Positions 51 through 56,199 of a stretch of DNA of 64,000 nucleotides are shown here, piece by piece. The translations under genes were made by a program, and so were the position numbers. How positions within the stretch are numbered: the stretch's first letter is position 1; each line of letters opens with the position of its first letter. The stretch lies in IMG/VR virus record IMGVR_UViG_3300028840_005860, positions 1 to 64,000 of that record, one strand, 5' to 3'. The notes beneath the pieces were generated by a model that made no database searches, was not told where the DNA came from, and saw only the letters and a list, made by a program, of their open reading frames with translations.

Positions 51-395
51 CTCACGTCTCCTCGGCACCAGCCTCGCGGACCCCGTACGTCCGACTTTGA
101 GGTGCCGGTCGAAGTGAGGAGTTTTCCGGTGAGAGCAGCGAGGCCTGGTGACCCCTTCCCTAGTGCCGAGCCGGGTACGGGCCAGCTCGTGAAGGTTGGC
201 GAACGCTCCTTCGCCACCCACACCGTACCGGCCTGAACGACGACGCGACGACGACCGAGCCCGCTCGCGCGCCTATGCCACGCGCCCTGACGAGACCATT
301 CCGCGAATTTCCGGGCCCGACCCCATAGCCTCGCGACCGAAGAAGGGGGCGCGCCCCGACAGGCCACACGAGACCCGCCAACGGTAGCGTCGGGC

Positions 396-441
396 AACCC
401 GGCCCCGAACCCGAACCCGGCCCCGAACCCGAACCCGGCCC
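396..441. repeat. 18-bp tandem repeat, about 2.5 copies
   Basis: AACCCGGCCCCGAACCCG at 396-413 and 414-431, plus a partial copy. Confidence 0.9.
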
Positions 442-448
442 AGGCCCC

Positions 449-928
449 ATGACCAACCTCCCGGACAACTTCTCCGACGACCCCGTCACCGAGCGCCTCG
501 CCTGCTACTTCGAGGAGCTCTACGCCTACCTCATAGAGGAGGGCGTCCCCGAGGACTGCCTCCCCTCGCCGTGGCACGTCCTCCGCCGCGTCACCCAGGC
601 CATCGACCACGAGAGGCTCAGGGGATGGCTCGACGCCTACGTCGCCGTGGAGGCCCAGGCACAGGACGACGACGAGGGCGACGGCGAACGGGCAGACCCC
701 AGACACCCAGGCTCGGCACGCCCAGAGGTCAGACGCAGACCCTCCTACCTCCGAGCACTAGAAGCCGACGGCGTCCGCCCACCCCCCAAGACCGCCCAGG
801 AGGACGCCAGCGCCTCCGTGAAGGGCGACGCCAGCGCCTCCGTGAAGGGCGACGGCAGCTCGGAAGGGGCCAAGGTGCCCCAGAGCCGTCAGGCGCCCGA
901 CGACGCCCACACGGCCCCTGACGAGTAG
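449..928 (+). CDS. hypothetical protein with internal 24-bp duplication
   Basis: 159 aa ORF; GACGCCAGCGCCTCCGTGAAGGGC at 803-826 and 827-850. Confidence 0.5.
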   Translation: MTNLPDNFSDDPVTERLACYFEELYAYLIEEGVPEDCLPSPWHVLRRVTQAIDHERLRGWLDAYVAVEAQAQDDDEGDGERADPRHPGSARPEVRRRPSYLRALEADGVRPPPKTAQEDASASVKGDASASVKGDGSSEGAKVPQSRQAPDDAHTAPDE

Positions 929-1535
929 CCGGGACTCGGACCACGTCCGTCCCCTCCTCGCTCGCCTCGCTCGCGAGGGTCGAGGGGAATGACCGGACGG
1001 GCGTCGGCCAGGCTCCCTCGAACGAGCGACGACGGCACCGCGAGCACGTCGACCGTTCGCCGCCACCTGCCTCGACCCCGAGAGGGAGATCTCTCCCCCG
1101 TCGAGACGAAAAAAAGTGCGGCGCAGGTCAGACAACTCGACCCGCCTCGACCCCACGTCGCGGCACGTCATCCGTGAGGAGCGGGCGTCAATGGAGAGAC
1201 TATAACGAAGCGTTGCAACGTGCTTGAGGTGTCGTTGGGTCTCGGGCGAGTTGGGGGTTGACGGGGCGCTCTCTTCGGTTCCGCTCCGAGGTCGTCGGCG
1301 CACGTTCCGCTTGCGCCCGAACTTCGCGGTGTGCTAGAGGGAGGCTCGTGGTCGTTTCCGGGCGCGATCGAAACGGGGTTGAACGTGCGGGTCGGACCTA
1401 CCGAGCCCTCGCGCAGGAAGGAACGCGAAGTCGACGTGTGAACTTCGATCGCGGTCGCGTCGTTGGTTTCGGGGGTTGTTTTTCGACGTGGGAGTCGTTA
1501 AAGAGTGTGCGCGCGACGTCGCGAGGAGGGTGTTG

Positions 1536-2726
1536 ATGCTCTCGCAAGTGCACGAGGTGGATCGACGGTCGTGCGGGTTCGGTGGTGCTGGCCAGGTGCC
1601 CGAGTTGAACCTGTACACGCGGTACGAGCACGGAAACCTCCCGGTGAGGGTGCATCGCGACGACGCGGGGCAGACTCGCTACTCGGTGACGCACCCGTTC
1701 GGTCGCGTCGAGACGTACCCGAGCGCGCGGCGGCTGATCAGCTCGCTCTACGGACGGGACCTGCACGTGTCGTTCGACCGCTACTTCCGGCTGGGGCGCT
1801 ACCGGAGGGAGGGGCGGCCCTCGGGCGAGGCGAACCTGCTCACCCTGCTAGACTCGTCGAGCTCGCGCTCGAGGACCAGGTCGACTCCGATCACCGTGCA
1901 CGCGCGGAACGAGCCCGGGAGGGTGATGCGAGGTACTCGGATCGTACTCGCGCGGTCCGAACGGGCAGGCGGGGCGGGTCCGCGGGGAGGTTTGGACGAC
2001 CTGGACCCCGACGTTGAGGAGTTCGTGCGGGCGCTCGAGGGGGACTTGAGGCCCCTGGACGAGTTCGTGGTGCCGACGGAGGAGATGGTGGAGGAGTTCG
2101 ACCGGGCGTTCCGGCTCGAGCTCGACCGGGTGGAGGAGCTGGTGGGGATCGACCTGGGGGAGCAGTCGCTGCGGAGCGGGTCGAGGTACAAGGCGGACGA
2201 GGTGCGTCGGCTCTTGTGGAAGGGGTTCGCGGGGAGGATGCTGTCGCAGGGCTACGACCCGGAGGAGGTCTTGCAGGAGATCTACAAGGGGCTGCTGGTA
2301 CGGAACGGCGGCAGGTGTCCGTGGGACGCGCGCAAGTCGACGTTCGGGCACTACGTGCACATGGTGATCTCGTGCGTGCTGACGAACTACCACCGGAAGC
2401 AGGTGCGGAGGATCGACCGGGACGCGGTGCCGCTCGAGGTGGGGAGGGACGGCGAGGATCGGGACGTGGACGTGGGGCAGTGGGGTTCGTGCGACATCTG
2501 GCACGGGTCGGAGGTGACGGACCAGACGCTGCTGGTCGAGCTCGCGGGGCATCTCGACGAGGTGGCGGACGAGTGCCCCGAGGCGCAGCTCGGGCGCGAG
2601 ACGCGGACGGGACACAGGCCGTCCTTCGTGTCGAAGGCGCTCGCCTGGCTGCGGCGCCACACCGCGGCGTGGGCCCTGCAAGGTGACATGGCCGCCCTCG
2701 TTCCCGCGCGATTCCTCGCCAACTAG
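1536..2726 (+). CDS. ECF-like RNA polymerase sigma factor with long N-terminal extension
   Basis: AGGAGG before ATG 1536; region-2-like YDPEEVLQEIYKGLL...WDARKSTFGHYVHMVISCVLTNYHRK; short region-4-like TGHRPSFVSKALAWLRR. Confidence 0.6.
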   Translation: MLSQVHEVDRRSCGFGGAGQVPELNLYTRYEHGNLPVRVHRDDAGQTRYSVTHPFGRVETYPSARRLISSLYGRDLHVSFDRYFRLGRYRREGRPSGEANLLTLLDSSSSRSRTRSTPITVHARNEPGRVMRGTRIVLARSERAGGAGPRGGLDDLDPDVEEFVRALEGDLRPLDEFVVPTEEMVEEFDRAFRLELDRVEELVGIDLGEQSLRSGSRYKADEVRRLLWKGFAGRMLSQGYDPEEVLQEIYKGLLVRNGGRCPWDARKSTFGHYVHMVISCVLTNYHRKQVRRIDRDAVPLEVGRDGEDRDVDVGQWGSCDIWHGSEVTDQTLLVELAGHLDEVADECPEAQLGRETRTGHRPSFVSKALAWLRRHTAAWALQGDMAALVPARFLAN

Positions 2727-2972
2727 GGTCTGCAGGTCAGCTTAGGTGACCTGCAAACCGTCGTGGAGGCACCATCGCGATAGTCAGGGAGGGGAAACCG
2801 GCCATCGCGACGGTGCTAGGTCCGGTTTCCGTTCCTGAAGGAGTCCGGCGGTCGGGTTCTGGCGAGGTTCAGGGCGCTCGCGGAGCCCCCAGGCGAGCGG
2901 ATTGAGGTGTTGCAGGGCGCGTTCGGGGAGGTTCGGCGTTCTTGAGTTGGGGAGTTGGTCGGAGTCCGGTGG

Positions 2973-3137
2973 CTACCCGAAGTCCTGCAGCTCCTTCGCG
3001 TGGAGGAGCAGGCCCTGCTCGAGGAGCGTGGCGGTCTCGTCTAGCAGGGCCTCGCGGCGCTCGTGCTCCAGCTCGTCGAGGAGCTCCTCGACGAGATGGT
3101 CGAGGAGGTTCTCGGTGCTTGGTGGGAGGCGGTTCAT
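2973..3137 (-). CDS. small paralog D (54 aa)
   Basis: MNRLPPSTENLLDHLVEELLDEL..., read manually. Confidence 0.6.
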   Translation of the reverse strand: MNRLPPSTENLLDHLVEELLDELEHERREALLDETATLLEQGLLLHAKELQDFG

Positions 3138-3143
3138 CCGAGG

Positions 3144-3360
3144 TCACGGAGCCCGCGTCGAGACGGAGCGGAGGCTGATGCCGTAGTTCCGGGAGGCCGC
3201 GGTGATGGCCTCGGCCGCCTCGATCATGGTGGTGCCGTACCGACGGAAGGCGGCGCGGACGAGTCCTGAGCCCGTCCAGCAGCTCGTCCACGAGCTGGTC
3301 AACGACCCTCTGAACTCGTGGAGGAAGGTCGGCGCCGGTTTTTGGGGAGGTTTTGGGCAC
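3144..3360 (-). pseudogene. small paralog C, apparently frameshifted near 3265
   Basis: LPPRVQRVVDQLVDELLDGL, then continues as GLVRAAFRRYG... in another frame. Confidence 0.4.
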
Positions 3361-3533
3361 CTAGAAAGTCCGGTGGTGGGGTCTGCTGGGTTTTCAGGGC
3401 ACTGAGACGTACTTGAGGTGGTCTTGGAGACGCGCTCGGGGCGGGGGCTCGAAGTCCGGGTGCTCGAGGAGGTAAAGGAGCCTCTGAGTCCGCAGAGAGT
3501 CCGGTAGTGGCTTCTGGGGGACGTTTGAGCACC

Positions 3534-3773
3534 TTAGAGGTGGCGGCCGCCGGGTCCGGGAGGGTTTTCGGGGGCCGTATCCTTACTTAAGGCGCGCCGG
3601 ATGGAGATAGAGAGGAGGGTTGGGTACTTGGTGGAGGCTTCGGGATCGAGGAGGACGTAGTCGAGGGGGCGTTCGGGGACCTTGGACGCGGCCTCGAGGA
3701 TGAAGTCCTGCTGCAGCTCGAGGACGAGGCGGTCGAGGAGCTTCTCGGTGCGTGCTGGAAGGCGGGAAGTCAT
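3534..3773 (-). CDS. small paralog B (79 aa)
   Basis: MTSRLPARTEKLLDRLVLEL. Confidence 0.6.
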   Translation of the reverse strand: MTSRLPARTEKLLDRLVLELQQDFILEAASKVPERPLDYVLLDPEASTKYPTLLSISIRRALSKDTAPENPPGPGGRHL

Positions 3774-3782
3774 GGAGCTCGT

Positions 3783-3950
3783 TCAGAGCGGCAGGGTGCG
3801 GGCCGGGTTGTCGTTGGCCTTGCGGACCATGTCCTTCAGCAGGTAGAGGAATGCCTTGTAGAGGACGGAGTCCTGTACCTCGAGCTCGCCGATGAGCTCG
3901 TCCACGAGGGAGTCTAGCAGTCGTTGGGTGCGTGCCGGGAGCGGAGTCAT
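3783..3950 (-). CDS. small paralog A (55 aa)
   Basis: MTPLPARTQRLLDSLVDELIGEL..., read manually; same GAGCTCCATGACT start context as paralog B. Confidence 0.6.
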   Translation of the reverse strand: MTPLPARTQRLLDSLVDELIGELEVQDSVLYKAFLYLLKDMVRKANDNPARTLPL

Positions 3951-4152
3951 GGAGCTCTCGTGGGGTTCTACCCCTTCAGGGGTCGTGGTGGGCGAGGATC
4001 CGGGATTTCGTGACGCCCGAGCGCGAGGAGCCCGGGGTTTGCAGTGGGTGCTCGAGCGCGAGACGGCCTCGCAGGGCCCTTTCCTGGGCCTTTCAGGTCC
4101 GGAGGAGCCCGGAGTTTGCAGTGGGTGCCGTACAGAGGCGGTTCGAAGGGAG

Positions 4153-4239: not shown

Positions 4240-4313
4240 CGTGGGGGGGTTCTTCGGCCCTCAGAGGTCCGGGAAGGGTGGAGAAGTGTCGAGTTGGGGG
4301 GTCCGGGAGGGTG

Positions 4314-4393: not shown

Positions 4394-4614
4394 CTCGTGT
4401 AAGTTCTTCGGGAGGTCCGTGCAGGTGGTGACCGACGATATGGTGCCTGGGGAGAGCCCAGGACAAGGCTTGACTGGGGCCGCACTGAAACAGCAGTCGG
4501 TCAACTCACGATCCCTGGAGGAATACGGGACCTCCAGGGGTCTTTTTTTGCCCTGGAAACCCGGTTCGGGGGTGAAAGGTGGCGTGCCGGGTCGCTTTTC
4601 GGTCCCTCGGGGCG

Positions 4615-4640: not shown

Positions 4641-4647
4641 GGGGGTC

Positions 4648-5139: not shown

Positions 5140-5140
5140 G

Positions 5141-8325: not shown

Positions 8326-8424
8326 GCCCTCTGCACGGACGTTTCGACGAATTTACAGGAGGAGCGCGGGTCGCGCAGAGCGCTTGATCTGCAGGGGAGC
8401 AAGCTGTCGTGCGATGCTCGAGTC

Positions 8425-9412: not shown

Positions 9413-10016
9413 TCGAGGGTGTCTACGCCTCGAGCTGCGCGAGCGCCTCGCGCAGCTCGCTCTGGAGGGCCTCCACGGTCTCGTCCGCCGCCGAGGCGGC
9501 GCTCTCGAGGCTCTGGAAGTCCCAGCGTCCTTCCTCGTAGCCGATCTCGTCGTGGTGGAGGGTGGAGAAGCGGAGAACCTGGAGCTCCTAGCGAGGCGTA
9601 CAGGGCCTCAGGAGAGGTCCCGAGAGGCTGATCTCGTGGGCCACGACCTCGAGGGACCATCGGAAGGGACCCACGAGGGCGGTCCAGCCGTCCCCGTCGC
9701 GGGGAGCAGCGGCCTGGTCGTCGTCGAGCGGCCGCCAGGGGAGCCTGGAGGCGGCGAGGAGGGGTGGAAGGTGCTGGTGGTCCATTGGAGGTCCCGGGTT
9801 CTCGGAGCAGAGAGGTGGCGTGAGGCGGTTTCTTGCGATCTCATGCCGGTGGGGACCCCGTTCTCGGACACGGCGCCACGTGAGAAGGCTCACAGTCAGT
9901 GTCCGGTTCGCGGACACTCTCGCGCACCCTGCGCCTGTTTGTGTAAGATCGGTGGGTGGTGCGTGCAGGGGGACGAGGGCGACGTCCAGGGTGGACTACG
10001 CCTGGAGGAAGAGCAG

Positions 10017-11684
10017 ATGAGCGAACCAGACATGGACACGGCGAGAAGGTGGCTTGAGCTCGTGAGGAGCGACGGCGACTCCGAGTCGAAGGCGAAGTAC
10101 CTGCGCGAGAAGGGGTACACGGACGAGCAGGTGGAGGAGTTGATGGCGGAGGAGGAACCCGAGTGCGAGGACTGCTGACGGCGGATGTAAATCTGCCGGG
10201 TCTTCCGTGCAGGACGTCATGAGCGAGGCAACGAAGAGCGACACGCTCGAGCTAGTCGCGGAGTGCATCTGCAGGGCGGAGAGTTCGGCGGAGCCGAGGA
10301 AAGTCCTCGAAGAGGGGAAGATCCTCCTGGCCGAGGCCGTCCTTCGCGGCGAGCAGCTAGACAAGGTGCGCCTGGAGCTGTTCATGCTCCAGTGCGCCAA
10401 GAACTACCAGACGGACGGCAGCGACCGGGCCGTGCTGGCGTGGGCGCCCTTCCTCGGGGCCTGTGCGGACTACGTCCGGGAGGGGGTGGTGTGCATGGGA
10501 GACGGCCGGGTGGCGACCGCCGAGGGATGGGACTACTCCAACTGCGAGCCCGTGGAGATCATCGCGACGTCACCCGAGAGACGTACGAGCGGCATCGGCG
10601 GTTCGTGCTCGAGGGTGTCGGCCCCGAACCCGCTCCGAACTCCCCGACGGAGGAGGCCATGAGCGACGAGAAGTTCAAGCTGACCCCCGACATGGAACCC
10701 CTACCCATGAAGGCGCTGAAGGACGGGATCTGCATTCACTGCAAGGAGACCCTCAAGAAGGACACAAGGTGTGTGTGGATCGCAGGAGAGGGACTGCTCC
10801 ATGACAGCTGCCTGGGAGGGCCCAACCTCTTCCACGAGGAGGAATCCGAGCTCACTCGGGAGCGCAAGCAGGAGCTGCTCGAGGGCTGCACGGAGATGTG
10901 CATCAAGGTGCTCGTGCAGAAGGGAAGTCCGGCAGAGCGGCACGGTGGTGCCGTGATGACGGCGTCGATAGGCGCCCTGGAGGGGTACGTGATGGTCCAC
11001 GCCGCCTACGAGGACTCGCCCGACGGAGAGGAGATGGCGACCTTCCTCGAGGTCCTGGAGGACGACGACGTCGACTGGAGGAAACTCGGATGAAGGTGAA
11101 GAACGCGGTCGTGTACAAGGACGAGGGGAGCTGCGGCCCGGTGTGGGTGGTCAGGAACGGCAAGTGGTCCAACTACGAGGACTCGGAGTTCGAGGACCTG
11201 AACGGCAATCCCAGGCCCGAGTGGTTCACGCGCAGGCAGGCGGCCGCCATCGCCAGGCGCGAGGGCCTGCCGCTGGTGGACGGCTAGGAGAAGCCTGGTG
11301 GAACGCCTATGCTTCGCGAGTGATGGAGGTCGAGCAGTGGAGTACGCGGACAGGACGGAGAAGATCGAGGACCTGGTGATGCGCGCGGAGGAGGTCGAGG
11401 ATCCCCGGGACGTGATCGAGGAGGCTCTCGAGGAGATGGCCCAGGCCGTGATCGAGGACGAGGAGCTCGACGCGCCGCGTCTGAGGAAGCTGGCCATGCG
11501 CTTCGCCAGCGCCGCGCGAGGGGACCCCACGCACCTCGGTAAGGTGCTGGCGGGGCTCCGGTTCGTGAGCAACGTGGACTCCTACGAGCGAGAGCGCCAA
11601 GTCGTCCTGGGAGACGGCCGCACGGCGACCAGGGACGGCTGGCGGGAGTCCAGCCCGGAACCCAGACAGGAGCGTTCGTCTTGA
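10017..11684 (+). other. run of short hypothetical genes (10017-10178, 10219-10662, 10659-11093, 11090-11287, 11337-11684)
   Basis: ATGA-overlap coupling, SD motifs, class I promoters at 9942 and 10186. Confidence 0.7.
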
Positions 11685-11941
11685 TCGGAGTCGTGGAGAC
11701 CGTCACTCCCGAGCGGGCTCGGGAGCTTCTCGAGCACAACAGGTGCGGGCGCCCCCTCGACCCCGACATCGTGAAGATGATGGCTCGGGCCATGCGCAGA
11801 GGGCGCTGGTCCCCCGACATCCAGGGGATGTCTATCCGGTTCGACGCGGAGGGGTACGTGGTCCAGGGGCAGACGCTGCTGGCGGCGGTCGTGGAGGCGG
11901 ACGCGACCCTCGAGATGGTGATGGAGCCTCGGTTCGTGTAA
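11681..11941 (+). CDS. short ParB-N-like protein
   Basis: VETVTPERARELLEHN...RW...IRFDAEGYVVQGQTLLAAVV. Confidence 0.55.
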   Translation: MIGVVETVTPERARELLEHNRCGRPLDPDIVKMMARAMRRGRWSPDIQGMSIRFDAEGYVVQGQTLLAAVVEADATLEMVMEPRFV

Positions 11942-11968
11942 AAAAGTCAGGTGTCGCGTGCAGGGAGC

Positions 11969-12532
11969 ATGGCGACACTGAACCGCTTTCCGTTGTTCGG
12001 CCTGTGGAACCGCGTGGCCGCGGAGGTGCTCGAGTACGAGCCCGACGAGGCCCGTTGCATCGGCCACGGAGTAGCCGTCCTGTACGCGATCCGCGCGCAG
12101 GGTGGGGGCTACCGGAAGCCCAAGAAGGGCGGCGCCGACAAGGGTTCCATCCCGGTCGGCAAGGATGCCAAGGTGCTAGCGGCCGACGAGATCGCGTTCG
12201 GAGGGGACAGCCTTCCGTGCGAGCTCGACGCCGACGGTCGGGTACTCAGGTGCCTGGTGGGCTGCAGGAGTCCGAGGGACAAGGCCCAGACGCCGAGCTC
12301 CTACGAGCACGACGTGGAAGCCAAGATCAAGGGGGAGTACCTCGAACTGCTGACCAATGGGATGCGCGAGTTGTTGAGCTCGTACAAGCCGGCGGAGCTG
12401 GGAGGTCGTTTGATTTACCGGAGATACGATGACTTCAAACGCGCGTGTGCAGCTGGACGTCGGATTGATCTGGATGCTTTGGTAGAATGGTTGAAAGAGG
12501 AAACCCGGAAACGTGCCCGCACTGCCGCTTAG
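11969..12532 (+). CDS. conserved hypothetical protein
   Basis: MATLNRFPLFGLWNRVAAEVLEY; ATG 6 nt after class I promoter. Confidence 0.75.
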   Translation: MATLNRFPLFGLWNRVAAEVLEYEPDEARCIGHGVAVLYAIRAQGGGYRKPKKGGADKGSIPVGKDAKVLAADEIAFGGDSLPCELDADGRVLRCLVGCRSPRDKAQTPSSYEHDVEAKIKGEYLELLTNGMRELLSSYKPAELGGRLIYRRYDDFKRACAAGRRIDLDALVEWLKEETRKRARTAA

Positions 12533-13478
12533 TCAGGGTTACGAGGTGCAGCTAGACGATGCGGACCTGGCGTTTGCATCCCACTGGAAATGGTCCGCGG
12601 ACGTGCGCCCGCACGGAACTGTGTATGCGGTACGGATGGAGACGGTCCAACAGCATCCGCGCCGGCAACGGAAAGTGTACCTGCATCGGCAGATTCTGAG
12701 TCGTAAACTCGGTCGTCCGTTAGGAAAGCAAGAGATGACTGACCACGAAAACGGGGACGGTCTAGATTGTAGGCGTTACAACCTCCGTCTTGCCACCTCG
12801 GCGGTAAACAACCGCAACACGAGGAGCAAAGGAGGCACCTCTCAATTCAAAGGCGTTTCATGGTGCTCTCAGGAAAAAGCGTGGCAGGCAGTTCTTGACA
12901 TCGGACTTTTCGCATCGGAAGAAAACGCTGCGCGGGCACGAGACGAAATAACCCGCGGCATCCCGGGTTGTCGAGCCAATTTCGAGAATTCCGAACTGGA
13001 ACTGGGACCTTTCACCGAAATGGGCCTAAGCCAGGGGCAAGTAGCCAAGGTCAGCCCCGAGGATGAACACAGGTTTGTTCCGTTCCGGTGGTACGCCATC
13101 AGGCCCCGGAACGTGTGGTACGCGGTGCGTCATGAGAAGAGACGCACTATCTATCTGCACCGGGAGGTTTTAGCGGAGGCGTTGGGGCGACCACTGCTGG
13201 GACATGAAAAGGTGGACCATCGCAACGGAGACGGGTTGGATTGTCGCCGAACCAATTTGCGTGTGGCGAGTTTTGGAGTCAACGCCCACAACACACGGAG
13301 AGGATGGGGACGATCTAAATACCGAGGTGTGAGTTGGGTGCAGGCTCGGGGGCAATGGCTCGCGCGTATCCGGGTGGGGCTCTATCAAACCGAAGAAGCG
13401 GCAGCTGCGGCTTACGACAGCGCGGCACGGCTTCTGCCTGGGTGGCGTCCTAATTTCCCGAGCTGGCGCCCCTCATGA
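12513..13478 (+). mobile_element. HNH homing endonuclease with duplicated HNH-AP2 module
   Basis: Two copies of YLHR.IL...(T/V)DH.NGDGLDCRR.NLR followed by KGVSW/RGVSW...EE.AA.A.D; lower GC than flanks. Confidence 0.85.
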
Positions 13479-14029
13479 CGTTCCTGTTCCCGATGCGCCC
13501 GTCGACGCCTCGAGTGCTCCCCGAGAGTCCGGCAGAGTTCCTCGTCCAGGAGAAGGTCGACGGCTGGAACGTCGTGGTGAACGGGGGGCGCGTGTGGACG
13601 AGGCACGGGCACGACATCACGAGCTGGTGCTCGAACTGGCGGTTCGACCTGAACCCTCCCTGGCCGGTCAACGGCGAGCTCGTGGCGGTGGGAGGCCAGC
13701 GCAAGGACGTGCCGAGCATCAAGTCCGGCAAGTTCGAGCCGCGCCTCCACGCCTTCGACGTCATGCTCGAGGGCGTGCCTCTCGAGGAGCGCCTCGAGAT
13801 GGTCGACGAGTGGGCCGAAGGAGACGCGTGGCCGATACTGACCTGGGACCCACTGGAGGAGGGAGGAGGATGGGGCTGGGTGAACCTCGTCCTCGAGATA
13901 GTCAAGGCGAACGGCCTCGAGGGGCTCGTGCTGAAGCGGAAAGGTTCCCCGTACCACGTCAGTCAGGAGATCAGCGTGGTGAGTCCCGACTGGCTGCGGA
14001 TGCTCGTCCCTGCGCAGGTTACGCGGTGA
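13475..14029 (+). CDS. minimal ATP-dependent ligase (adenylation domain only)
   Basis: QEKVDG (motif I), VNGELV (III), AFDV (IIIa), EGLVLK (IV); no OB domain. Confidence 0.75.
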   Translation: MTFLFPMRPSTPRVLPESPAEFLVQEKVDGWNVVVNGGRVWTRHGHDITSWCSNWRFDLNPPWPVNGELVAVGGQRKDVPSIKSGKFEPRLHAFDVMLEGVPLEERLEMVDEWAEGDAWPILTWDPLEEGGGWGWVNLVLEIVKANGLEGLVLKRKGSPYHVSQEISVVSPDWLRMLVPAQVTR

Positions 14030-14283
14030 AAGTCCGGCAGCGCAGCCCGCGCGGGATGTAAGATCTTCGGGGGCGTCGTACAGGGGTCACGATGATCGTG
14101 AAGGCTTACGACGCCAGCGGGACCGAGCCCGAGAAGCTCGTGTGGGAAGGAGACCTCGAGGAGCTCCTCCGGGAGTACCAGGGCGACCTCACGGCGAGCG
14201 ACGTCGCGCAGCTGCGGTGGCTCCAGGTGGGGCAGTCGGCCACGGTCGGAGGCGGCTTTCGCGTGGAGCGCGTGGGATGACGT

Positions 14284-14344
14284 TTTTCGTGAAAATCGAC
14301 GGAACCGGGGAATGGGACTGATGGCCCGTTGGTAATGCACATGA
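14284..14344 (+). promoter_or_regulatory. class II motif TTTTC-n-GAAAA ... GGGAATG-N7/8-TGGCCCGTTGGTAATGCASATGA
   Basis: Copies at 14308, 22240, 33668 (+), 34929-34965 and 56385-56420 (-); partial copy near 39820-39875. Confidence 0.75.
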
Positions 14345-14357
14345 GACGGAGCAGACC

Positions 14358-15116
14358 ATGACCGACACTAGGTACCAGGAGACGAGAGAAGTCGTCCGGT
14401 TGATAGACGCGGTGCTCGAGCACGTCTTCACGCGATCGCCGAAGTCCTTGCCGTTACCGAGGAAACCAAACGGGTTCTGGGATTCTCAGCCGCTAGGAGA
14501 GCTACCCGACAAGGAACTCGCGGCAAGACTGGGAGTGACGCGCACTGCCGTGTCTTGTGCGAGGTGGGCGAGAAAGATCCCAGCCTACGGCTATCAGAAG
14601 CCGCACCCAGACATCGACTGGGACTCTCAGCCACTGGGAAGGATTCCCGACACGACGATCGCGGCCGAGTTGGGGGTCGCGGGCCCGACTGTCTGGGAGC
14701 AGAGGAGAAAGCGAGGCATCCCTCCAGCTCCTGAAAGCACCCGGAGATCGTCGGGACGGAAACAAGTCGACGTCGACTGGGACGAGCAACCCCTAGGCGA
14801 GTTATCGGACGTAGTCATCGCGGAGGTGTTGGGGGTTGCGTCCACGACCGTGAGGAACGCGCGGTGCTGTCGGGGAATCCCAGTCTCCCCACGGGGAGGC
14901 CGAGGGAAACTGCCTCCCAGGAGGGCCGCCCGATCAGGCAACAAACCCGTGGTCGACTGGGACTCTCAGCCCCTAGGAGAGGTTCCCGACACGGCGATAG
15001 CAGAAAGCCTCGGGGTTTCCTGCACGACCGTGGGACTCACGAGGAAGAAACGTGGCATCCCGGTGTTCAGGAGACGTCGCCTCCGGCAACCAGGAAGGGG
15101 CGGAGACTCGATATGA
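14358..15116 (+). CDS. four-repeat HTH-like protein
   Basis: Four repeats of WD(S/E)QPLG..(P/S)D...A..LGV....V...R..R.IP. Confidence 0.75.
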   Translation: MTDTRYQETREVVRLIDAVLEHVFTRSPKSLPLPRKPNGFWDSQPLGELPDKELAARLGVTRTAVSCARWARKIPAYGYQKPHPDIDWDSQPLGRIPDTTIAAELGVAGPTVWEQRRKRGIPPAPESTRRSSGRKQVDVDWDEQPLGELSDVVIAEVLGVASTTVRNARCCRGIPVSPRGGRGKLPPRRAARSGNKPVVDWDSQPLGEVPDTAIAESLGVSCTTVGLTRKKRGIPVFRRRRLRQPGRGGDSI

Positions 15117-18100
15117 TGAAGATCGACCCCAGGCCCGATCACTTCGAGTACGACATCCGGGCGATCCTCCGGTTCACCGCACGGGACCTGCGAGTGCTCC
15201 GCTACTACGCGGAGCGCCACTACGACCACACCTGCAAGACGTTCTTCGAGAGCGGCGGCAGGGGCAACGCGTGGCGCTGGAGCTTCCGGCGCGACGACGA
15301 GGACGTGGACCCGTTCGACAAGGCGTGCCCGCCCGACCTCGAGTGTGAGTTCCCGTCGACGGGCAGCATCCGCGAGCTCGACCTGTGCCTCAAGATCCTC
15401 GAGGGGGTGGAGTTCGAGCGTGAGGAGGATCTCATCGCGGAGGCGTGGCGCCTGCGGGGCGAGATCCTCAACCTCGTAGACCTCATTCACGCCGAGTACG
15501 CCCGTGTCCGCGGAACTCCGGCCGCGCCCGAGAGCGCGAAACGCGCGGCACCGTAGCACTCCACGATCCGAGTGTAAGAAGTTCCCGACCCCCGTGCAGA
15601 ACGCAGGAGCAAACCACATGGCGACCAAGAAGACCACCAAGTTCGACAGGCGGACCGTCCGCACCATCCTCGCGGAGGTAGAGGAGGCGCTCCGGCCGGT
15701 CGCGGAGAAGCACGGCATCCGGCTAGAGAGGAAGCACTGCACCTACCACGCCGACGAGCTGCCGGTCGCCTACAAGTTCCTCATCACGGAGCTCGACCAG
15801 GAAGGCAACGAGATGTCGAGCGACGCCAAGGAGTTCGTGCGACAGGCCGAGTTCCACGGGCTCAAGCCGAGCGACCTCAACAAGGGGGTCACCGTGCGGG
15901 GCGAGAAGTACCGGATCGTGGGCCTGCGTCCCAGGAGCCGCAAGTATCCCATCCTGATGGAGCAGGTGCGCACCGGCAAGATCTACAAGTTCTCGGCCAA
16001 GTCGGTCGCGTTCGGGCTGAAGGCCGCGAAGGCGGCGTAGGTGACGACGATGGCGACGATCAAGATTGCAGCCAGCGAGATCGAGGGCCCCTTCCTCGTG
16101 AAGGTGGGGACCTTCGACGGCGGCCAGAAGAACCTCACCGTCCCGACCCTGAAGGACGCCTCCTACGCCGTGAAGGGTTTCATCTGGGACGACCGCGTGC
16201 GCTCGAGCGACTGGCACGGCGGCGAGGTCGTCCGCGACGACGGCACCGGAGACGTGGTGGCCGTCGTGAGCTACAACGGCCGAGTGTGGGGCGCCAAGGC
16301 GCACCCGACCGACCCCTGGCACGTCCCCGACAAGGCTCTGGAGTTCGACCTGGATGCGTGACCTCACGAGCTTGACGGTGGAGGTCTGGCGAGGCCGCAA
16401 GATCGAGCCCGGCACCGTGGCGCGCTGCGTCTGGCACGGGAGGACCCGGTTCGGCTGGCGGGTGCTGCTCGAGATGAACGACGGCGTCGCCCACAGCCAG
16501 GTGTTCACGAGGGCCTCCAACGTGCGTCCCCTGGAGGGCCAACCCGTGCAGGAGAGCCTGTTCCGGGGAATGCCGCGCGAGGTGCGCTGAAGATTCTTCC
16601 GATCCCCCGTACAGGGGGTCGCGTAACAAACACAACCCCAACAGGAGCACAGCAACATGCCACAGACCGTTTTGTTTTTCACCAAGGGCGAGGTCGCGGA
16701 GCTCGTCCGCACGTTCCTTGAGCAGGAGGGGCGCGACGTCTTCAACGCCATCATTCAGTTCTCGTCCGAGGGCGTGCACGTGGGCAACTGCCCTGAGGCC
16801 GCGGCGCCCTGCAGCTGCGACGACGAACCCGAGGACTTCGACGACGCGGAGGCTCCCGAGGATTTCGTGGGACACATGCAGGGGGCGGACGTGCTGGCGG
16901 CCATCCGCATGAAGCCGCGCACGGCCTGGGAGATCGCGGAGGAGATCAGGAGCGACGCGTGCTCCGTGAACAGCACTCTAGGGCATCTCGGAGACAAGGT
17001 CGCCAAGGTGGCTCCCGCTCGAGAGGATGGCGAGACCGTCTCCCGCTGGATGGCGACGGGCTCCGACGAGTACGGCGCCTTCGTCGCGCAGGAGAAGGAG
17101 CGTGTCGAGGCCCAGGTCGAGAAGTGGAACGCGGACGTGCTCAAGCACGCGCCGGCGTTCTACGAGAGGTACGAAGATCGCATGACGATCCTCGAGAACC
17201 TCATCTCGGGGTACGTCGCGACGGACGAGGAGATCCGGCGCGACTGCAAGTCGATCTTCTACGCGATGGCCGAGAAGGGACTCCTCGAGCACCACGAGCA
17301 CGGCTGGCGGGCCGCCAAGACGGACGCCGACCGCGTGAGGGTGGCGGCCATCCAGGGAGGCATCCGGGAGGTCCTGCGGGGCAAGGAGGAGGGACTCACG
17401 ACCGACGAGATCCGCGACGCCCTGCCGGAGCAGCTCGACAAGAACCTCATCCGACACTGCCTCCGGCACATGGACGACGCGTACCGGGGCAGCGACGGTC
17501 GCAGGCGCCTCAAGGACTAGCACCGAGAACGAGCAGGGGCGCCCCCTCCTCGAGGGGAGGCGCCCCGCATGTTCCTCACCAGGTCCCTAGAAGTGCGGGA
17601 CGATCTGGAGGGTCGTCGTGCCACCGAGTCGCGCGGTGCTCACTCCGGCCGTGTTCTGCGGCCCCGAGGGATTGTTGGCGGTGACGCCGCGCGCTCGGGC
17701 GACGTTCGCGTAGACGCCGTGCTCGCGGAGGGCGATGTAGGCGGCGATGGGGGTGGTGCGACCGGCGGGAAGGATGGGATTCATGGCTGAGCTCCTCGAA
17801 GGAGGGTGCGCGATAGGCGTAAAAACGTGTCGATGTAAGATTTTCCGAAGCCGCGTGCAGAGAGTAATGACGAATCCAGACAACTTCCAGAAACTCGTGG
17901 CTCACCTGCAGGCATTCATCAAGAAGGCCCCCGAGGAGGACCCGTACGACTGCGACCCCATGGAGCTCTACTGCGGCAACGAGGACGACGCCCGCAGGCT
18001 GGGCGAGGAGGCGGCGGAGCATCGCGTGGCAACTCAGATGAAGGAGTGGCTCCTCGAGGTCGGCGAGCCTCCGGAGAAGGGTTGAGCGATGCCGAGAGTT

Positions 18101-19385
18101 CAGAAGGGCACGAAGTTCCGCTCCTCCTACGCCGACTCGAATCCCCTGTGGGTGGTCAGGCGGCGCATCAGGTCGGGCGTGTTCGAGTGCGAGATCCTCA
18201 ACGAGCCGATCGAGGTCGACGGCAAGACGTACGACTCCGACTGGGTCGGGACCGTCAGGACGTTCACGCGCGAGCACATCGAGACGGCGCTGGCCTTCGC
18301 CGAGTGGCAGCGCGGGCTCCGGACCGCGCACGAGTCGTTCTACGACGGCCTCGAGCTGGGCCGGGTGGTCCACTACCACAACGCCTTCGGAAAGTTCATC
18401 CGCTGCGAGGTCGTGGTGGCGCCGGCCGGCGAGCGAGGCCTCGAGGAGGGCGAGAAGTGCCTGAGGCGGCTGGCCCTGGTCGGCGAGTGGAACAAGTACG
18501 AGCTCGAGGAGGACGGCTACCACATCAAGACCATCAAGAAGGGGGCCCTGTTCAAGCCCAGCTCGGACTGCATCTACGAGAATCCCAAGGCGGTCAGCAC
18601 CCGGGGCCACGGGGACCCGGCGAAGAAGCCAGCGCTCAAACTCAAGGAAGGTGCCGCGTGAAGCCGCAGACCGCCATCTACTACCCCGACGGCCGGATCC
18701 TCGAGATGACCTGGAAGCCGGGAACCTTCCCCGCCTACGAGTGGCTTCGACGAGCCGTGGGAGGTCTCCTCCAACCCGTCGACAGGTTCATGGACGAGGC
18801 CGAGCAGGGGCGCGCCTACGCCGACGAGGAGGGACGCCTCAAGAAGCTGCCGGTGAACATCCCGGGGATGAAGGCCGTCTCGTGGCCCGAGCCCCCTCAG
18901 GGCTGGGACCTCTACGAGCACGACCTCGAGCTCGTCGGAGGCGTCGCCCCGCCGCCGCCGGGTCCGGTCGTCGTCCACGGCGGGATGACCGACGAGGAGC
19001 TTCGGAGGGCGCGGCGGCACCTGCAGCGCTGGAGTCCTCTCTGCGGTCCGGTGCTCGTGCTCCGAGGCTGGAGCGACGACGACGAAACCGGCTACGAGGA
19101 GCTGAACCCTGAGTCCCTGGGAGACGAGTTGCCATGAAGATTCGATGTCCACACTGCGGAAACGACGACCTCACGAAGATCCAGTGGCAGGAGTGGGTGC
19201 CTGCCGTGCGGCCCCTCCTGGCCGTGCGCGACGGCGAGCTTCTCGTGGACATGGAGGCGGAGCACCTCGACAGCGAGGGAGCCAGGGGCGAGAGCCTGTA
19301 CTGCCGGTGCTGCTACGAGGAGTTCCCCGTTCCCGAGGGCCTAGCCGTCGATCACGTGACGGCCGCGGAGGGAGCGGTCGGATGA
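15113..19385 (+). other. run of phage hypothetical genes (15113-15556, 15618-16040, 16041-16361, 16354-16590, 16657-17520, 17867-18085, 18089-18661, 18658-19137, 19134-19385)
   Basis: Co-oriented overlapping ORFs with biased codons; class I promoters at 15573 and 17834. Confidence 0.75.
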
Positions 19386-19900
19386 CGAGCTTCGCCGACA
19401 TTCCCAAGTTCCCGAACGCGAAGTACGAGGTCGACGTCCCGTGGAACCACGTCGAGAGCAACCTCGAGACGCTGGCCGGCGACGGCGAGCTCCGGCTCGA
19501 CCCCGATTACCAGCGGACTCACGTCTGGACCCCCGAACAGCAGATCGCGTTCGTCGAGTTCCAGCTGATGGGGGGCGAGGTCAGCCGCACGCTTGTGTTC
19601 AACGCCCCCCACTGGAACAGGTCCGGAGAGCAGTACGTCGAGCTGGTGGACGGCAAGCAGAGGCTCGAGGCCGTCAGGGCGTTCATGCGGGGCGACGTCC
19701 CGGCCTTCGGTCGGCGCCTCCACGAGTACGAGGGTCGGTTTCCCACGATGGACTACCAACTGCGTTTCCAGGTCTGCGCGCTCCCGACCAGGGAGGAGGT
19801 CCTGCAGCTGTACCTGAAGATCAACGCCGGCGGCACGCCTCACACGAAGGCGGAGATGGACCGAGTACGGGACCTGCTCAGGAAGGAACGATCCCGATGA
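19382..19900 (+). CDS. stand-alone DUF262 (ParB/Srx-fold, GmrS-like) protein
   Basis: LDPDYQRTHVWT..QQ..F, VELVDGKQRLEAVRAF, YLKINAGGTP. Confidence 0.8.
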   Translation: MTSFADIPKFPNAKYEVDVPWNHVESNLETLAGDGELRLDPDYQRTHVWTPEQQIAFVEFQLMGGEVSRTLVFNAPHWNRSGEQYVELVDGKQRLEAVRAFMRGDVPAFGRRLHEYEGRFPTMDYQLRFQVCALPTREEVLQLYLKINAGGTPHTKAEMDRVRDLLRKERSR

Positions 19901-21496
19901 AGCTCTCTCTCAAGGCGAAGGAGATGCTCGAGGGCATGGCGAAGGCCGTGGAGGGCCTCCTGGCACAGCTTCGGCGTCGAGGCGCCGTGCTGGAGGAGGA
20001 CGAGGTCGACCTGACGGCGTACAACGAGTACAGGCGCGAGTTCCCGAGGCAGGACGCATGACCATCCAGGACCAGATCGACGAGCTCCAGGACCAGATTC
20101 AGAGGCTCGAGGCCCAACAGCACCGGTGCCCCCACGTCTGGGAGGAGGTCAAGTACGAGCCCATCGTCCACGAGGCCCACCGGGCTCTCGACTACATGGG
20201 ACCCATCCGAGAGGGCCAACCCGTACGGGAGGTCGACGTGCCGAGAGAGGAGATCCCCAGGTGGTCGCGCAGGTGCTCCGCCTGCGGCCTCGTCGAGTAC
20301 ACCAAGCTGACCGAAGAGGTTCAGGTCCGAGGGAAGATCCCGGGCACCAAGGCCACCCAGCAACATCCGGTCTTCCCAGGCCGACGGTCCTGATGCCGAG
20401 GACGCCGCCGCTGCACTACGACTACCTTCGGCGGAAGGTGCCGACCGGCTGGCAGCTCTACGATCTCGTCCGCCAGGGACACGTCCAGATGTCGAACGAG
20501 GACCTCCTCGAGGGCTCCGTGATGGAGTTCCTCAACGAGCTCGACGAGACCACCAGGCACATGACCTACGCGATGCTGATGTACGAACGCCTGGGTCAGA
20601 ACACGTACGTGGTGGGTCCCAGGGTCCGGGAGCTCTTCAGGCGGACCGAGCTCGCTCGCGTCACCGAGGACCTGCTCGAGGCGCCGGTCGAGGCCTTCTA
20701 CGTCGCCCTTCCCGACTGCCCCTGGACGATCTGGGGAGGCGCTCGGACGCGACAGCACGAGGTCCGGGGGGTCTACGTCACGTTCTCGAAGTCGGTGACC
20801 GCGCCCGGACGCACGGACGCGGCGCCTAGGATCCACCTGATGGTCTGGGGGAGCCCGAATCAGAGGTCGCTGGGGCCGGGCGACGACGCCCTGCTCTGGT
20901 TCTCCATCGACCTCGGGCGCTGCTTCTCGAGCGGAGAGGACTTCGAGAGCTTCTTCCGTCGCACCTCCGTGATGACGACCGAGCCCGGAAGCGCAGAGGA
21001 GGCAGAGTGGGGCGGCGGCGACCCCTTCGACGCGCTGGGTGCCCCCCTCCTTCCCGAGGAGCGCGAGGTCCTCCTCGAGCAGCGAGAGACCCTCATCAAG
21101 CTCCTGCGGGTGGTCCTGAACGTCTGCCTCTACGTGAGCTCCGAGGAACCCGACCTCGAGGTGACCGACAACGAGGAGGTCGTCAGGGACCTCAGGCGCC
21201 AGGCCGCTCGCAAGAAGTCCCCCGGACGTCGCCGCAAGCTCGAGCGGCGCATCGCCAACCTGCCCCGAGTCAGGATCGTCTACGTCGGGCCCCTCTTCGA
21301 GGAGCTCGGGAAGTCCGGCAACGGAGGTGGTGCTCGAGGAACCCACGCGAGCCCGGTCGAGCACGAGGTGCCCCCGCACTACCAGCACTACTGGGTCGGG
21401 TCCGGAGACGACCGACGGCGGGTCCTGCGGTACAAGGGGATGTACGTCCGGGGCGCCGGCCGGCCCGACCGCACCGTCGTGAAGTTCAGGGAGTAG
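19897..21496 (+). other. hypothetical genes 19897-20061, 20058-20393, 20393-21496
   Basis: Overlapping start/stop codons. Confidence 0.7.
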
Positions 21497-33597: not shown

Positions 33598-33714
33598 GCG
33601 GCCGAATTCGGCCGAACTGGGTCCCCTACGCGAATGTAAAATTCTCGTCCTCATCGTGCATGGGTCAGGAATAGAAAGCATGGCCCGTTGGTAATGCAGA
33701 TGAGGAGCGAAGAG

Positions 33715-56161: not shown

Positions 56162-56199
56162 CCTCTTGCCACCTGCACGGGACCCCTGACGTTTTTACA

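What the first reader, a model, noticed from the sequence alone, without database searches (positions are those of the whole stretch)
1536..2726. Phage ECF-like sigma factor with a ~200-aa unknown N-terminal extension
Seen: sigma region-2-like motifs in the C-terminal half and a region-4-like end that looks about 15 aa too short near 2600. The N-terminal block (LNLYTRYEHG...FDRYFRLGRY) is unrecognised. Inference: it is the best candidate reader of the class I or class II promoter, and the extension may be a built-in regulatory or DNA-binding domain.
Basis: partly seen in the sequence, partly recalled or inferred. Interest (0 to 1): 0.6.

Follow-up and report, generated by a model that had tools for sequence, protein, structure and literature searches.

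The report
Jumbo-phage sigma factor, broken copy
This gene of a 230-kb phage encodes a divergent ECF-like RNA polymerase sigma factor that always carries an unknown N-terminal domain, and the copy in this window has lost 15 residues from its promoter-binding helix-turn-helix.

Summary
Window 1536-2726 (+) is a real gene of 396 aa in a 230,069-bp virus record. Its C-terminal half is a divergent sigma-70-family protein with sigma2 and sigma4 domains and no sigma3. This rests on sequence profiles (all below the curated cut-offs) and on an AlphaFold model whose best PDB matches are ECF sigma factors.

The "15 aa too short" remark is exact. A clean 45-nt in-frame deletion lies after base 2600. It removes residues 356-370 of the 411-aa form, the first half of the sigma4 helix-turn-helix. 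Three otherwise identical assemblies, Logan contigs of three runs, and all 19 relatives in a representative alignment carry the missing segment. The short form is in the deposited JGI record. Whether it is a variant or an assembly error cannot be decided without raw reads.

The N-terminal domain of about 75 aa is conserved and was found almost only fused to this sigma core (91 clusters among 1.84 billion proteins). It has no significant structural match, and its function is open.

The genome shows no RNA polymerase gene. A strong two-block motif, TGTAA-N15-CGTGCAG, occurs 14 times against 0.04 expected. Four relatives that carry sigma homologues have motifs of the same geometry. This motif is the best candidate for the cognate promoter; that link is inferred, not shown.

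The parts
1331..1341 (+). GTGCTAGAGGG box about 195 nt upstream of the start codon. It is a candidate early promoter of the host-sigma, extended -10 type for the sigma gene.
   Evidence: Similar boxes lie upstream of the sigma genes in L008 (four tandem copies), L006 and L007. TTGAC-N12-GTGCT recurs in L012. The sigma-70 consensus scan found nothing here, so this is weak inference.
1523..1529 (+). Shine-Dalgarno GAGGAGG, 6 nt before the ATG at 1536.
   Evidence: Read from the sequence. It supports 1536 as the start rather than the TTG at 1476.
1536..2726 (+). Sigma factor gene, short allele (396 aa plus stop).
   Evidence: This exact protein is on record on the 230,069-bp JGI contig.
1596..1820 (+). 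Conserved N-terminal domain, residues 21-95: four strands, then helices, then the Arg-rich FDRYFRLGRYR motif.
   Evidence: pLDDT above 90. Invariant residues are listed. A profile search finds it in 91 clusters; in the members checked it sits at the N-terminus of proteins with this sigma core. No significant fold match.
1821..2000 (+). Variable, low-confidence linker, residues 96-155, containing a short conserved T.I.VHG motif.
   Evidence: pLDDT is about 42-60 across most of this stretch, with segments below 50. Alignment gaps and length variation.
2007..2159 (+). Helical insert (residues 158-199) that only the ~400-aa subfamily has, followed by the invariant VGIDLG motif (203-208).
   Evidence: The ~300-aa subfamily lacks the helices but keeps GIDL.
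2190..2420 (+). Sigma2 domain, residues 219-295. It includes the conserved loop RN.G.CPWD..KS and the helix F..YV..VI.C...N..RK.
   Evidence: Sigma70_r2 and TIGR02937 matches. PDB profile hit to 3mzy. Foldseek and VIA matches to ECF sigmas over 204-403. Column conservation.
2421..2510 (+). Sigma2-sigma4 linker of about 30 aa, at low confidence. There is no sigma3 domain.
   Evidence: pLDDT below 50 at residues 299-302 and 307-324.
2511..2681 (+). Remnant of the sigma4 domain. The recognition helix (VS.AL.WLRR) is kept but the preceding part is missing.
   Evidence: In the intact form sigma4 matches 3mzy (Z 8.4), CnrH (Z 8.0, rmsd 2.5 over 66 residues) and SigD region 4. In the window protein the TIGR02937 match stops at model position 82, so sigma2 only.
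2600..2601 (+). Junction of the 45-nt in-frame deletion. The lost residues are 356-370 of the 411-aa form (ILPLVRSGWSRQEIA): the end of helix 348-361 and the first five residues of helix-turn-helix helix 366-373.
   Evidence: Only 1 nt of microhomology at the junction.
2727..2759 (+). GC-rich hairpin just after the stop codon, with no U-tract. Possible terminator.
   Evidence: -23 kcal/mol, z -2.8. The consensus terminator scan found none.
4398..4424 (+). First class A promoter candidate downstream of the sigma gene (TGTAA-N15-CGTGCAG).
8331..8357 (-). Class A promoter candidate. The ATG of the RadC-like gene (7708-8325) lies 5 nt after CGTGCAG, so the mRNA may be leaderless.
9942..22022 (+). 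Stretch holding six more class A sites, starting at 9942, 10186, 11937, 15573, 17834 and 21996.
33635..33661 (+). Class A site with a CGTGCAT variant.
56173..56199 (-). Class A site upstream of the small gene 55919-56161.

Best explanation
The gene encodes a phage sigma factor of the sigma-70 family with the two-domain (sigma2 plus sigma4) build of ECF sigmas. It is preceded by a family-specific N-terminal domain on a flexible tether.

The proposed mechanism has four steps:
1. Host RNA polymerase transcribes the gene early. The gene has no promoter of its own class upstream.
2. The protein binds host core RNA polymerase, since the phage appears to have no polymerase of its own.
3. It directs the polymerase to phage promoters of the form TGTAA(A/G)-T-rich-N-CGTGCAG, that is a 5-mer, 15 nt, then CGT. 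These lie in front of the small genes that begin just downstream of it.
4. Many of those start codons sit 5-8 nt after the -10 box, so the mRNAs would be leaderless or nearly so.

The N-terminal domain most likely docks the factor on a partner (host polymerase or another host or phage protein) or gates its activity. It probably does not read a conserved upstream DNA element.

The copy in this window has a 45-nt in-frame deletion that removes the first half of the sigma4 helix-turn-helix. As written it should be defective in -35 recognition. The functional form is the 411-aa protein found in the sister assemblies.

Shown: gene, family, domain build, deletion, motif statistics and motif conservation. 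Inferred: polymerase binding, promoter assignment, timing, leaderless starts and the role of the N-terminal domain.
For: Sigma identity:
- Sigma70_r2 hits 106 of 114 family members.
- TIGR02937 sigma70-ECF gives E 4e-5 to 4e-7 across both domains.
- The family profile hits PDB 3mzy (sigma-H) at E 1.5e-3 over profile positions 236-392.
- In the AlphaFold model the sigma2 and sigma4 helices have pLDDT of about 86-98.
- The top 12 Foldseek PDB hits are all ECF sigmas.
- Sigma4 reaches Z 8.4 and 8.0 with rmsd 2.5-3.7.

Family:
- At least 258 full-length relatives, all from metagenomes, on contigs up to 618 kb.
- None in 185,579 species genomes.
- The N-terminal domain was found in 91 clusters; nearly all are 270-450-aa proteins, and those checked carry this sigma core.

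Dependence on host polymerase:
- No match to PF00562, PF00623 or PF00940, and no DFDGD motif in any frame.
- Only one sigma-like gene.
- Terminase, ribonucleotide reductase and helicase genes confirm a phage.

Promoter:
- TGTAA-N16-GTGCA occurs 14 times against 0.04 expected in the 230-kb genome.
- The same motif occurs 10 times in 21 kb beside a sigma of about 52-54% identity in L006.
- TGTAGA-N-TGTTGA occurs 11 times beside a 36%-identical sigma in L008.
- GTTAAA-N15-CGTAAGT occurs 5 times in L029, and TTCCC-N15-CGTAA 8 times in L032.
- All five share the same 5-mer, 15 nt, YGT geometry.
- Known ECF promoters have a -35 AAC, a -10 CGT, spacers of 14-17 bp and a T-tract after the -35 (PMC5758882).
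- No such site lies upstream of the sigma gene in G000, L006 or L008; the sites begin just downstream of it.

Deletion.
Against: - All sequence-model scores lie below the curated cut-offs: 15 against 24 bits, and 23 against 42.9 bits.
- The Foldseek E-values for the whole model are weak (8e-3 and above).
- No experiment or RNA data links the protein to the motif. The three runs found are DNA contigs only.
- No strong two-block motif was found in most sigma-bearing loci examined: L007, L009-L012 and most of L017-L033.
- The TGTAA-to-CGT spacing lies at the short end of the ECF range.
- Very divergent phage polymerases could escape the Pfam and motif checks, and the record is only about 90% complete.
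- The N-terminal domain has no assigned function, and the complex test gave no verdict.
Confidence: 0.6

Rival explanations
1. The protein is a working sigma factor but reads a different promoter set, for example the CGTGAAA-N10-13-TAGAAG class or unknown late promoters. The TGTAA-N15-CGTGCAG sites would then be read by a host ECF sigma or an undetected phage factor.
For: A second, weaker motif class exists: 6 sites against about 0.7 in shuffles. Most sigma-bearing loci show no class A-like motif near the gene. No binding data exist.
Against: Class A-type motifs of the same geometry recur in five lineages that carry the sigma. They look like ECF promoters. They start right after the sigma gene. 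No other sigma-like gene was found.
Confidence: 0.2
2. The N-terminal domain is a built-in inhibitory or pro-sequence module. It would hold the sigma inactive until it is cleaved or displaced, as described for BldN (ECF121) or proposed for SigC (ECF36).
For: N-terminal extensions with these roles are the only ones described for ECF sigmas (PMC7826278). A long disordered tether separates the domain from the core. No anti-sigma gene is recognisable next door.
Against: The domain is as conserved as the sigma core, more than expected for a pro-peptide. The predicted model gives no confident packing against sigma2 or sigma4 (pTM 0.35). The complex test gave no verdict.
Confidence: 0.25
3. The N-terminal domain is a DNA-binding module, possibly of the small RAMA-like type. 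It would add a third DNA contact or sense phage DNA modification.
For: There are only weak structural resemblances. An ESM Atlas cluster of DUF2924/RAMA proteins aligns at TM 0.61 over 64 residues. The CcrM C-terminal domain gives Z 4.1 and MPND Z 4.2. A conserved Arg-rich motif follows the domain.
Against: All scores are within noise (best Z 4.7; Foldseek E at least 0.16). There is no Pfam RAMA hit even at E 10. No conserved bases lie within 40 nt upstream of the -35 box in the 14 sites.
Confidence: 0.15
4. The protein is not a promoter-specificity factor. It would be a sigma-like decoy that occupies host core polymerase, or the host sigma's partners, to shut off host transcription.
For: Sequence scores are below the cut-offs. 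The extra domain could bind host proteins. Phage takeover factors that target polymerase are common (PMC7824862).
Against: The DNA-contacting parts, the sigma2 helix F..YV..N..RK and the sigma4 recognition helix, are the most conserved parts of the family. Matching high-information promoters exist.
Confidence: 0.05
5. The 45-nt gap is an assembly or consensus error in the deposited contig, not a biological variant, and the phage in that sample carries the intact gene.
For: The rest of 12.7 kb differs from the sister contig L001 by a single mismatch. Logan contigs of all three runs flagged as possible sources carry the extra 45 nt. The loss should cripple an apparently essential regulator.
Against: The short protein is on record on the 230,069-bp JGI contig. 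The junction has no repeat that would explain a de Bruijn collapse, only 1 nt of microhomology. Contigs hide minority variants, so a real subpopulation is not excluded.
Confidence: 0.5

Closest known systems
ECF (group 4) sigma factors, such as M. tuberculosis SigH and SigL, E. coli sigma-E, C. metallidurans CnrH and F. nucleatum sigma-H (PDB 3mzy)
   Same: Both have a two-domain sigma2 plus sigma4 build with a short linker and no sigma3. The region 2.3/2.4 signature is in register. The sigma4 helix-turn-helix superposes at Z about 8. The candidate promoters have a CGT -10 box, an A-rich -35 box, a T-tract and a short spacer.
   Different: This protein scores below every curated model cut-off. 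It has about 200 extra N-terminal residues, including a conserved folded domain. It has no recognisable anti-sigma neighbour and no autoregulatory promoter. It is encoded only on large phage contigs and is absent from 185,579 species genomes.
ECF sigmas with N-terminal extensions (ECF121 BldN pro-sigma; ECF36 SigC; ECF12 sigma-R prime), as reviewed in PMC7826278
   Same: An ECF-type core is preceded by an extra N-terminal segment that is thought to control activity.
   Different: The published extensions are described as generally short and belong to cellular sigmas. Here the extension is a conserved, autonomous domain of about 75 aa plus a tether, seen almost only as a fusion in a phage family. 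No sequence relation to those extensions was tested.
Sigma factors of jumbo phages that lack their own polymerase (group 2 of PMC7824862), T4 gp55, SPO1 gp28
   Same: Same strategy: a phage without a polymerase encodes a sigma to redirect host core polymerase to phage promoters.
   Different: The described jumbo-phage sigmas are either minimal single-HTH proteins or RpoD-like. This one is ECF-like with an added N-terminal domain. PHROGs has no family for it, and the phage collection gave one partial hit, 36% identity over 24% of the protein.

Membership tests
Sigma-70 family, ECF type (group 4) | Sequence match to the family models above their curated cut-offs (Pfam Sigma70_r2 and Sigma70_r4_2; TIGR02937) | tested here: not met
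   Sigma70_r2 gives 15 bits against 24. TIGR02937 gives 23-30 bits against 42.9. Sigma70_r4_2 hits only 3 of 114 members, weakly. The matches are nonetheless consistent across the family and cover both domains.
Sigma-70 family, ECF type (group 4) | Sigma2 and sigma4 folds are present | tested here: met
   AlphaFold model with pLDDT of about 86-98 in both domains. Top Foldseek hits are all ECF sigmas. VIA gives Z 8.4 and 8.0 for sigma4 and Z about 7 for sigma2 plus sigma4. The PDB profile hits 3mzy at E 1.5e-3. The window's own allele lacks part of sigma4.
Sigma-70 family, ECF type (group 4) | No sigma1.1 and no sigma3 domain | tested here: met
   Only about 30 low-confidence residues lie between sigma2 and sigma4. 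The N-terminal part has no match to any sigma region.
Sigma-70 family, ECF type (group 4) | Cognate promoters with an AAC-type -35 box and a CGT-type -10 box | tested here: inconclusive
   Motifs of this type are strongly enriched in this genome and next to four homologues. No binding or transcription data exist.
Sigma-70 family, ECF type (group 4) | Autoregulation from its own promoter type and an adjacent anti-sigma gene | tested here: not met
   No class A site lies upstream of the sigma gene in G000, L006 or L008. The neighbours have no anti-sigma Pfam hit. Small neighbours of unknown function remain possible partners.
Sigma-70 family, ECF type (group 4) | Binds core RNA polymerase and confers promoter-specific initiation | not testable with these tools
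   Needs biochemistry. The host is unknown.
RAMA / DUF2924-like DNA-binding domains (considered for the N-terminal domain) | Sequence or fold match to PF18755 or PF11149 | tested here: not met
   No Pfam hit at E up to 10. Only TM 0.61 over 64 residues to an Atlas cluster and Z 4.1-4.2 to CcrM-C and MPND, all within noise.
Minimal phage sigmas (T4 gp55 type) | A single sigma2-like or single HTH module only | tested here: not met
   The intact protein has both sigma2 and sigma4.

The most novel reading that the evidence does not exclude
This may be a distinct, undescribed branch of the sigma-70 family confined to large phages. In it an ECF-like core is permanently fused to a new N-terminal domain that takes over the control or docking role that anti-sigmas or sigma1.1 play in cells. 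Each phage lineage would have co-evolved its own promoter within a fixed frame of 5-mer, 15 nt, YGT. In some lineages the promoter abuts the start codon, so that whole blocks of genes are expressed as leaderless mRNAs.
Probability: 0.35. Interest if true: 0.7.

Novelty: new variant of a known kind. Interest (0 to 1): 0.55.

Why it matters
Phage sigma factors were left out of the current ECF classification because they are too divergent (PMC7826278). Jumbo-phage surveys describe only minimal or RpoD-like sigmas (PMC7824862).

Here a large, metagenome-only family offers a compact system for experiment:
- one gene;
- one short, high-information promoter per lineage;
- several natural sigma and promoter pairs with the same geometry but different boxes.

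Such pairs would be useful for studying how ECF-type sigmas set specificity, and as orthogonal transcription parts. The conserved N-terminal domain is a new module whose partner could reveal how these phages take over host polymerase.

For annotation, the practical point is that the gene in this record is a truncated allele and should not be used as the family reference.

Tried and rejected
- Megablast of window 1-6000 against the phage collection found nothing. tblastn gave one partial hit to an uncultured 485-kb phage.
- PHROGs gave nothing useful for the protein.
- The scan of 185,579 species genomes found no relative.
- The N-terminal domain alone found a single 105-aa protein by word search, probably a fragment.
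- Fold searches with the N-terminal model gave nothing significant: PDB by VIA wide (best Z 4.7), PDB by Foldseek (best E 0.16) and the ESM Atlas. Atlas feature search gave scores of 0.78, below the useful level.
- Complex prediction of the N-terminal domain against sigma2-sigma4 gave no verdict (score 0.00). It counts neither for nor against binding.
- Consensus sigma-70 promoter and intrinsic terminator scans of 900-3000 found none.
- De novo two-block motif searches found nothing convincing in L007, L009, L010, L011, L012 and most of L017-L033. The L019 signal is a coding tandem repeat, not a promoter.
- The first intergenic k-mer enrichments were tRNA signatures. The AAGAA periodic signal lies in coding repeats.
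- A frameshift was considered for the short region 4 and rejected. The other two frames carry no sigma4-like sequence, and the difference is a clean multiple of three.
- A planted or tool-made deletion was considered and rejected. The exact short protein is on record with the 230,069-bp JGI contig.
- No raw reads were available. The three runs are kept as contigs only, so variant frequency could not be measured.
Full report
**Setting**

The window is the first 64 kb of a 230,069-bp IMG/VR virus record. The record is classed linear and estimated about 90% complete. GC is about 66%.

The genome is a phage. It has a large terminase subunit (199558-201459), ribonucleotide reductase and a RecD/Dda-like helicase. 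The window holds seven tRNA genes, and most of its small ORFs have no family. Relatives carry baseplate and T4 rIIB-like genes.

**The gene**

Window 1536-2726 (+) is an open frame of 396 codons with GC3 of 0.91. A GAGGAGG box lies 6 nt before the ATG. A GC-rich hairpin follows the stop at 2727-2759 (-23 kcal/mol, z -2.8).

**Is it a sigma factor?**

The single-sequence evidence is weak. Sigma70_r2 gives E 0.021 and 15 bits against a cut-off of 24.

The family evidence is much stronger:
- A word-based search found at least 258 full-length relatives of about 400 aa. All come from metagenomes, and JGI names many of them sigma-24 family.
- Of 114 aligned members, 106 hit Sigma70_r2.
- TIGR02937 (sigma70-ECF) matches the intact form over model positions 15-157 of 165. 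E is 4e-5, and 4e-7 for a relative. The scores stay below the curated 42.9 bits.
- A profile of the family hits one solved structure, sigma-H of Fusobacterium nucleatum (3mzy). E is 1.5e-3, across both domains.

An AlphaFold model built on the 114-sequence alignment gives the following layout:

| Residues | Feature |
|---|---|
| 20-90 | small folded domain |
| 95-155 | low-confidence stretch |
| 158-199 | helices |
| 219-291 | three-helix sigma2 |
| 292-325 | linker of about 30 residues, largely low confidence |
| 326-397 | four-helix sigma4 |

The twelve best Foldseek matches in the PDB are all ECF sigmas: SigH, SigL, RpoE and SigK. The second-look aligner gives Z 8.4 (3mzy), Z 8.0 (CnrH, rmsd 2.5 over 66 residues) and Z 7.7-7.8 (SigD region 4) for sigma4. 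It gives Z about 7 for sigma2 plus sigma4 together.

The sigma2 helix reads F..YV..VI.C...N..RK. From my own knowledge of ECF region 2.3/2.4 (not a tool result), it is in register with that signature. F270, Y273 and N284 are invariant in 293 sequences.

That test fails to refute.

**The short region 4**

In a representative alignment, all 19 homologues carry 15 residues, ILPLVRSGWSRQEIA, between window residues E355 and T356. One of them, P0002, is otherwise identical to the window protein.

At the DNA level, three independent contigs are base-for-base identical to the window across the gene, apart from 45 extra nt after base 2600. Two are ENA assemblies and one is a JGI contig from another sample. 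Across 12.7 kb the only other difference from L001 is a single mismatch.

The junction has just 1 nt of microhomology. The other two reading frames hold nothing sigma-like, so this is not a frameshift.

Logan contigs of three public runs cross the site, and all carry the extra letters. The runs are sediment and seawater metagenomes from three studies, each flagged as a possible source of this DNA.

The short protein is nevertheless on record with the 230,069-bp JGI contig. The deletion therefore belongs to the deposited record. Contigs cannot show minority variants, so I cannot tell whether it is a real subpopulation or an assembly error.

The functional effect is clear:
- The lost residues are 356-370 of the 411-aa form.
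- They make up the end of helix 348-361, the turn, and the first five residues of helix 366-373, the first helix of the helix-turn-helix.
- They include nearly invariant positions I356, L357, V360, G363, R366, E368 and I369.
- With the deletion, the TIGR02937 match falls to 14 bits and stops at model position 82, so it covers sigma2 only.

The window allele should be defective in -35 recognition.

**The N-terminal extension**

The extension is not one block. Residues 21-95 form a confident small domain (pLDDT above 90). It has four strands, then helices, and ends in the Arg-rich FDRYFRLGRYR motif.

A variable tether follows. After it comes a helical insert found only in the ~400-aa subfamily. 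The invariant VGIDLG motif lies just before sigma2.

A second subfamily of about 300 aa sits on contigs of 258-517 kb. It keeps the N-terminal domain and GIDL but lacks the insert.

A profile of the domain was searched against 1.84 billion cluster representatives:
- It found 91 clusters with E up to 1e-3.
- Nearly all are proteins of 270-450 aa with the domain at or near the N-terminus. The few short ones look like fragments.
- Those I inspected all carry the sigma core.

As a free-standing protein the domain was found once, in a 105-aa product on a 2.5-kb contig. The fusion therefore appears to be the rule.

The domain's fold has no significant match. The best VIA Z is 4.7, the best Foldseek E is 0.16, and there is no Pfam hit. 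The only recurring lead is a faint likeness to RAMA-type DNA-binding domains, which lies within noise. The complex test of the domain against sigma2-sigma4 gave no verdict.

**What would it read?**

The genome shows no multisubunit or T7-type polymerase by Pfam. No DFDGD motif occurs in any frame. No second sigma-like gene was found. This fits dependence on host core polymerase.

An unbiased two-block search of the 230-kb genome gave one outstanding signal. TGTAA-N16-GTGCA occurs 14 times against 0.04 expected.

The aligned sites read TGTAA(A/G), a T-rich stretch, then cCGTGCAGgg. Exactly 15 nt separate TGTAA from CGT, and nothing is conserved further upstream.

Ten of the 14 sites lie in the window. 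The first is at 4398, just downstream of the sigma gene, and none lies upstream of it.

In five sites a start codon follows CGTGCAG by 5-6 nt. One example is the RadC-like gene at 8325. This would put the transcription start on the start codon itself.

Comparison with relatives:

| Locus | Sigma identity to window | Motif | Copies |
|---|---|---|---|
| G000 (this genome) | - | TGTAA-N15-CGTGCA | 14 in 230 kb |
| L006 | about 52-54% | TGTAA-N15-CGTGC | 10 in 21 kb |
| L008 | 36% | TGTAGA-N-TGTTGA | 11 in 21 kb |
| L029 | about 34% | GTTAAA-N15-CGTAAGT | 5 |
| L032 | about 34% | TTCCC-N15-CGTAA | 8 |

All five share the frame of a 5-mer, 15 nt, then YGT.

Published ECF promoters have an AAC-type -35 box, a CGT -10 box, spacers of 14-17 bp and, for some sigmas, a T-tract after the -35 (PMC5758882). 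The shape, the conserved geometry with lineage-specific boxes, and the position of the sites relative to the sigma gene support the assignment.

There are counterpoints. Most other loci examined show no such motif within 10 kb of the gene. No transcription data exist.

A second, weaker class, CGTGAAA-N10-13-TAGAAG, has 6 sites against about 0.7 in shuffles. It may belong to host sigma or to another factor.

A GTGCTAGAGGG box lies about 195 nt upstream of the gene. Similar boxes lie upstream of relatives' sigma genes. This hints at an early, host-type promoter, but the inference is weak.

**Comparison with what is known**

The protein works like an ECF sigma and shares the fold. It fails the curated sequence cut-offs, has no recognisable anti-sigma neighbour and no autoregulatory promoter, and adds a conserved N-terminal domain.

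The ECF reclassification states that phage ECF sigmas were not captured. It also describes N-terminal extensions as rare, generally short, and either inhibitory or processed (PMC7826278).

The jumbo-phage survey describes phage sigmas as either minimal or RpoD-like (PMC7824862).

I found no paper on this family in three literature searches. That does not prove none exists. One relative is named in NCBI as a sigma-70 family protein of a Gemmatimonadales MAG. This is a faint hint to the host, nothing more.

**Verdict**

The protein is a phage ECF-like sigma and the best candidate reader of one promoter class.
- The role of the N-terminal domain is unresolved.
- The allele in this window is probably non-functional or mis-assembled.
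- I rate it a new variant of a known kind, of moderate interest.

Noticed in passing
window 2973-3137 (-), 3534-3773 (-), 3783-3950 (-): Three small paralogous ORFs (54, 79 and 55 aa) lie just downstream of the sigma gene on the opposite strand. They share an N-terminal motif LP.RT..LLD.LV.EL. Small minus-strand genes also follow the sigma gene in L006. Function unknown; they could be partners of the sigma.
   Followed up: no
window 7708-8357 (-): A RadC-like gene (Pfam RadC in the sister contig) has its ATG only 5 nt after the CGTGCAG box of a class A site. Several other class A sites in G000, L006 and L008 have start codons 5-8 nt after the box. This suggests leaderless mRNAs.
   Followed up: partly
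window 2313-2396 (sigma2 residues 260-287): C261, H272, H275, C280 and H286 are conserved in 94, 90, 74, 89 and 88% of 293 family members. This could be a metal or redox site in and next to the sigma2 specificity loop, which is unusual for ECF sigmas.
   Followed up: partly
window 29103-48519: Seven tRNA genes (Leu, Arg x2, Val, Ile-tat, Gln x2). tRNA signature k-mers dominate the intergenic enrichment genome-wide, so the phage carries many tRNAs.
   Followed up: no
window 8951, 45559; G000 66171, 78886, 80797: A second promoter-like class, (TT)CGTGAAA(A)-N10-13-(G)TAGAAG(G), has 6 strict sites against about 0.7 in shuffles. Some lie 20-40 nt before start codons.
   Followed up: partly
L008 about 9750-9950: Four tandem GAAGTGCTA(G/A)AAGTG-like boxes lie upstream of the sigma homologue. 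A single related box, GTGCTAGAGGG, sits at window 1331-1341. They may be early promoters or operator repeats.
   Followed up: no
G000 1536; L001 4682; L002 511; L012 2551; P0092 contig 1051: In several independent assemblies the sigma gene lies within 0.5-5 kb of a contig end. This may mark a genome terminus or a recurrent assembly break nearby.
   Followed up: no
G000 224362-227505 (L016:6363-9503): A 1047-aa ORF combines a LAGLIDADG homing-endonuclease match with weak methyltransferase and D5-like matches. It may be an intein or a homing-endonuclease insertion.
   Followed up: no
L019 9044-9386 (-): A tandem 18-nt repeat (GTAGACC-type) inside a coding region mimicked a two-block motif in the promoter search.
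   Followed up: yes
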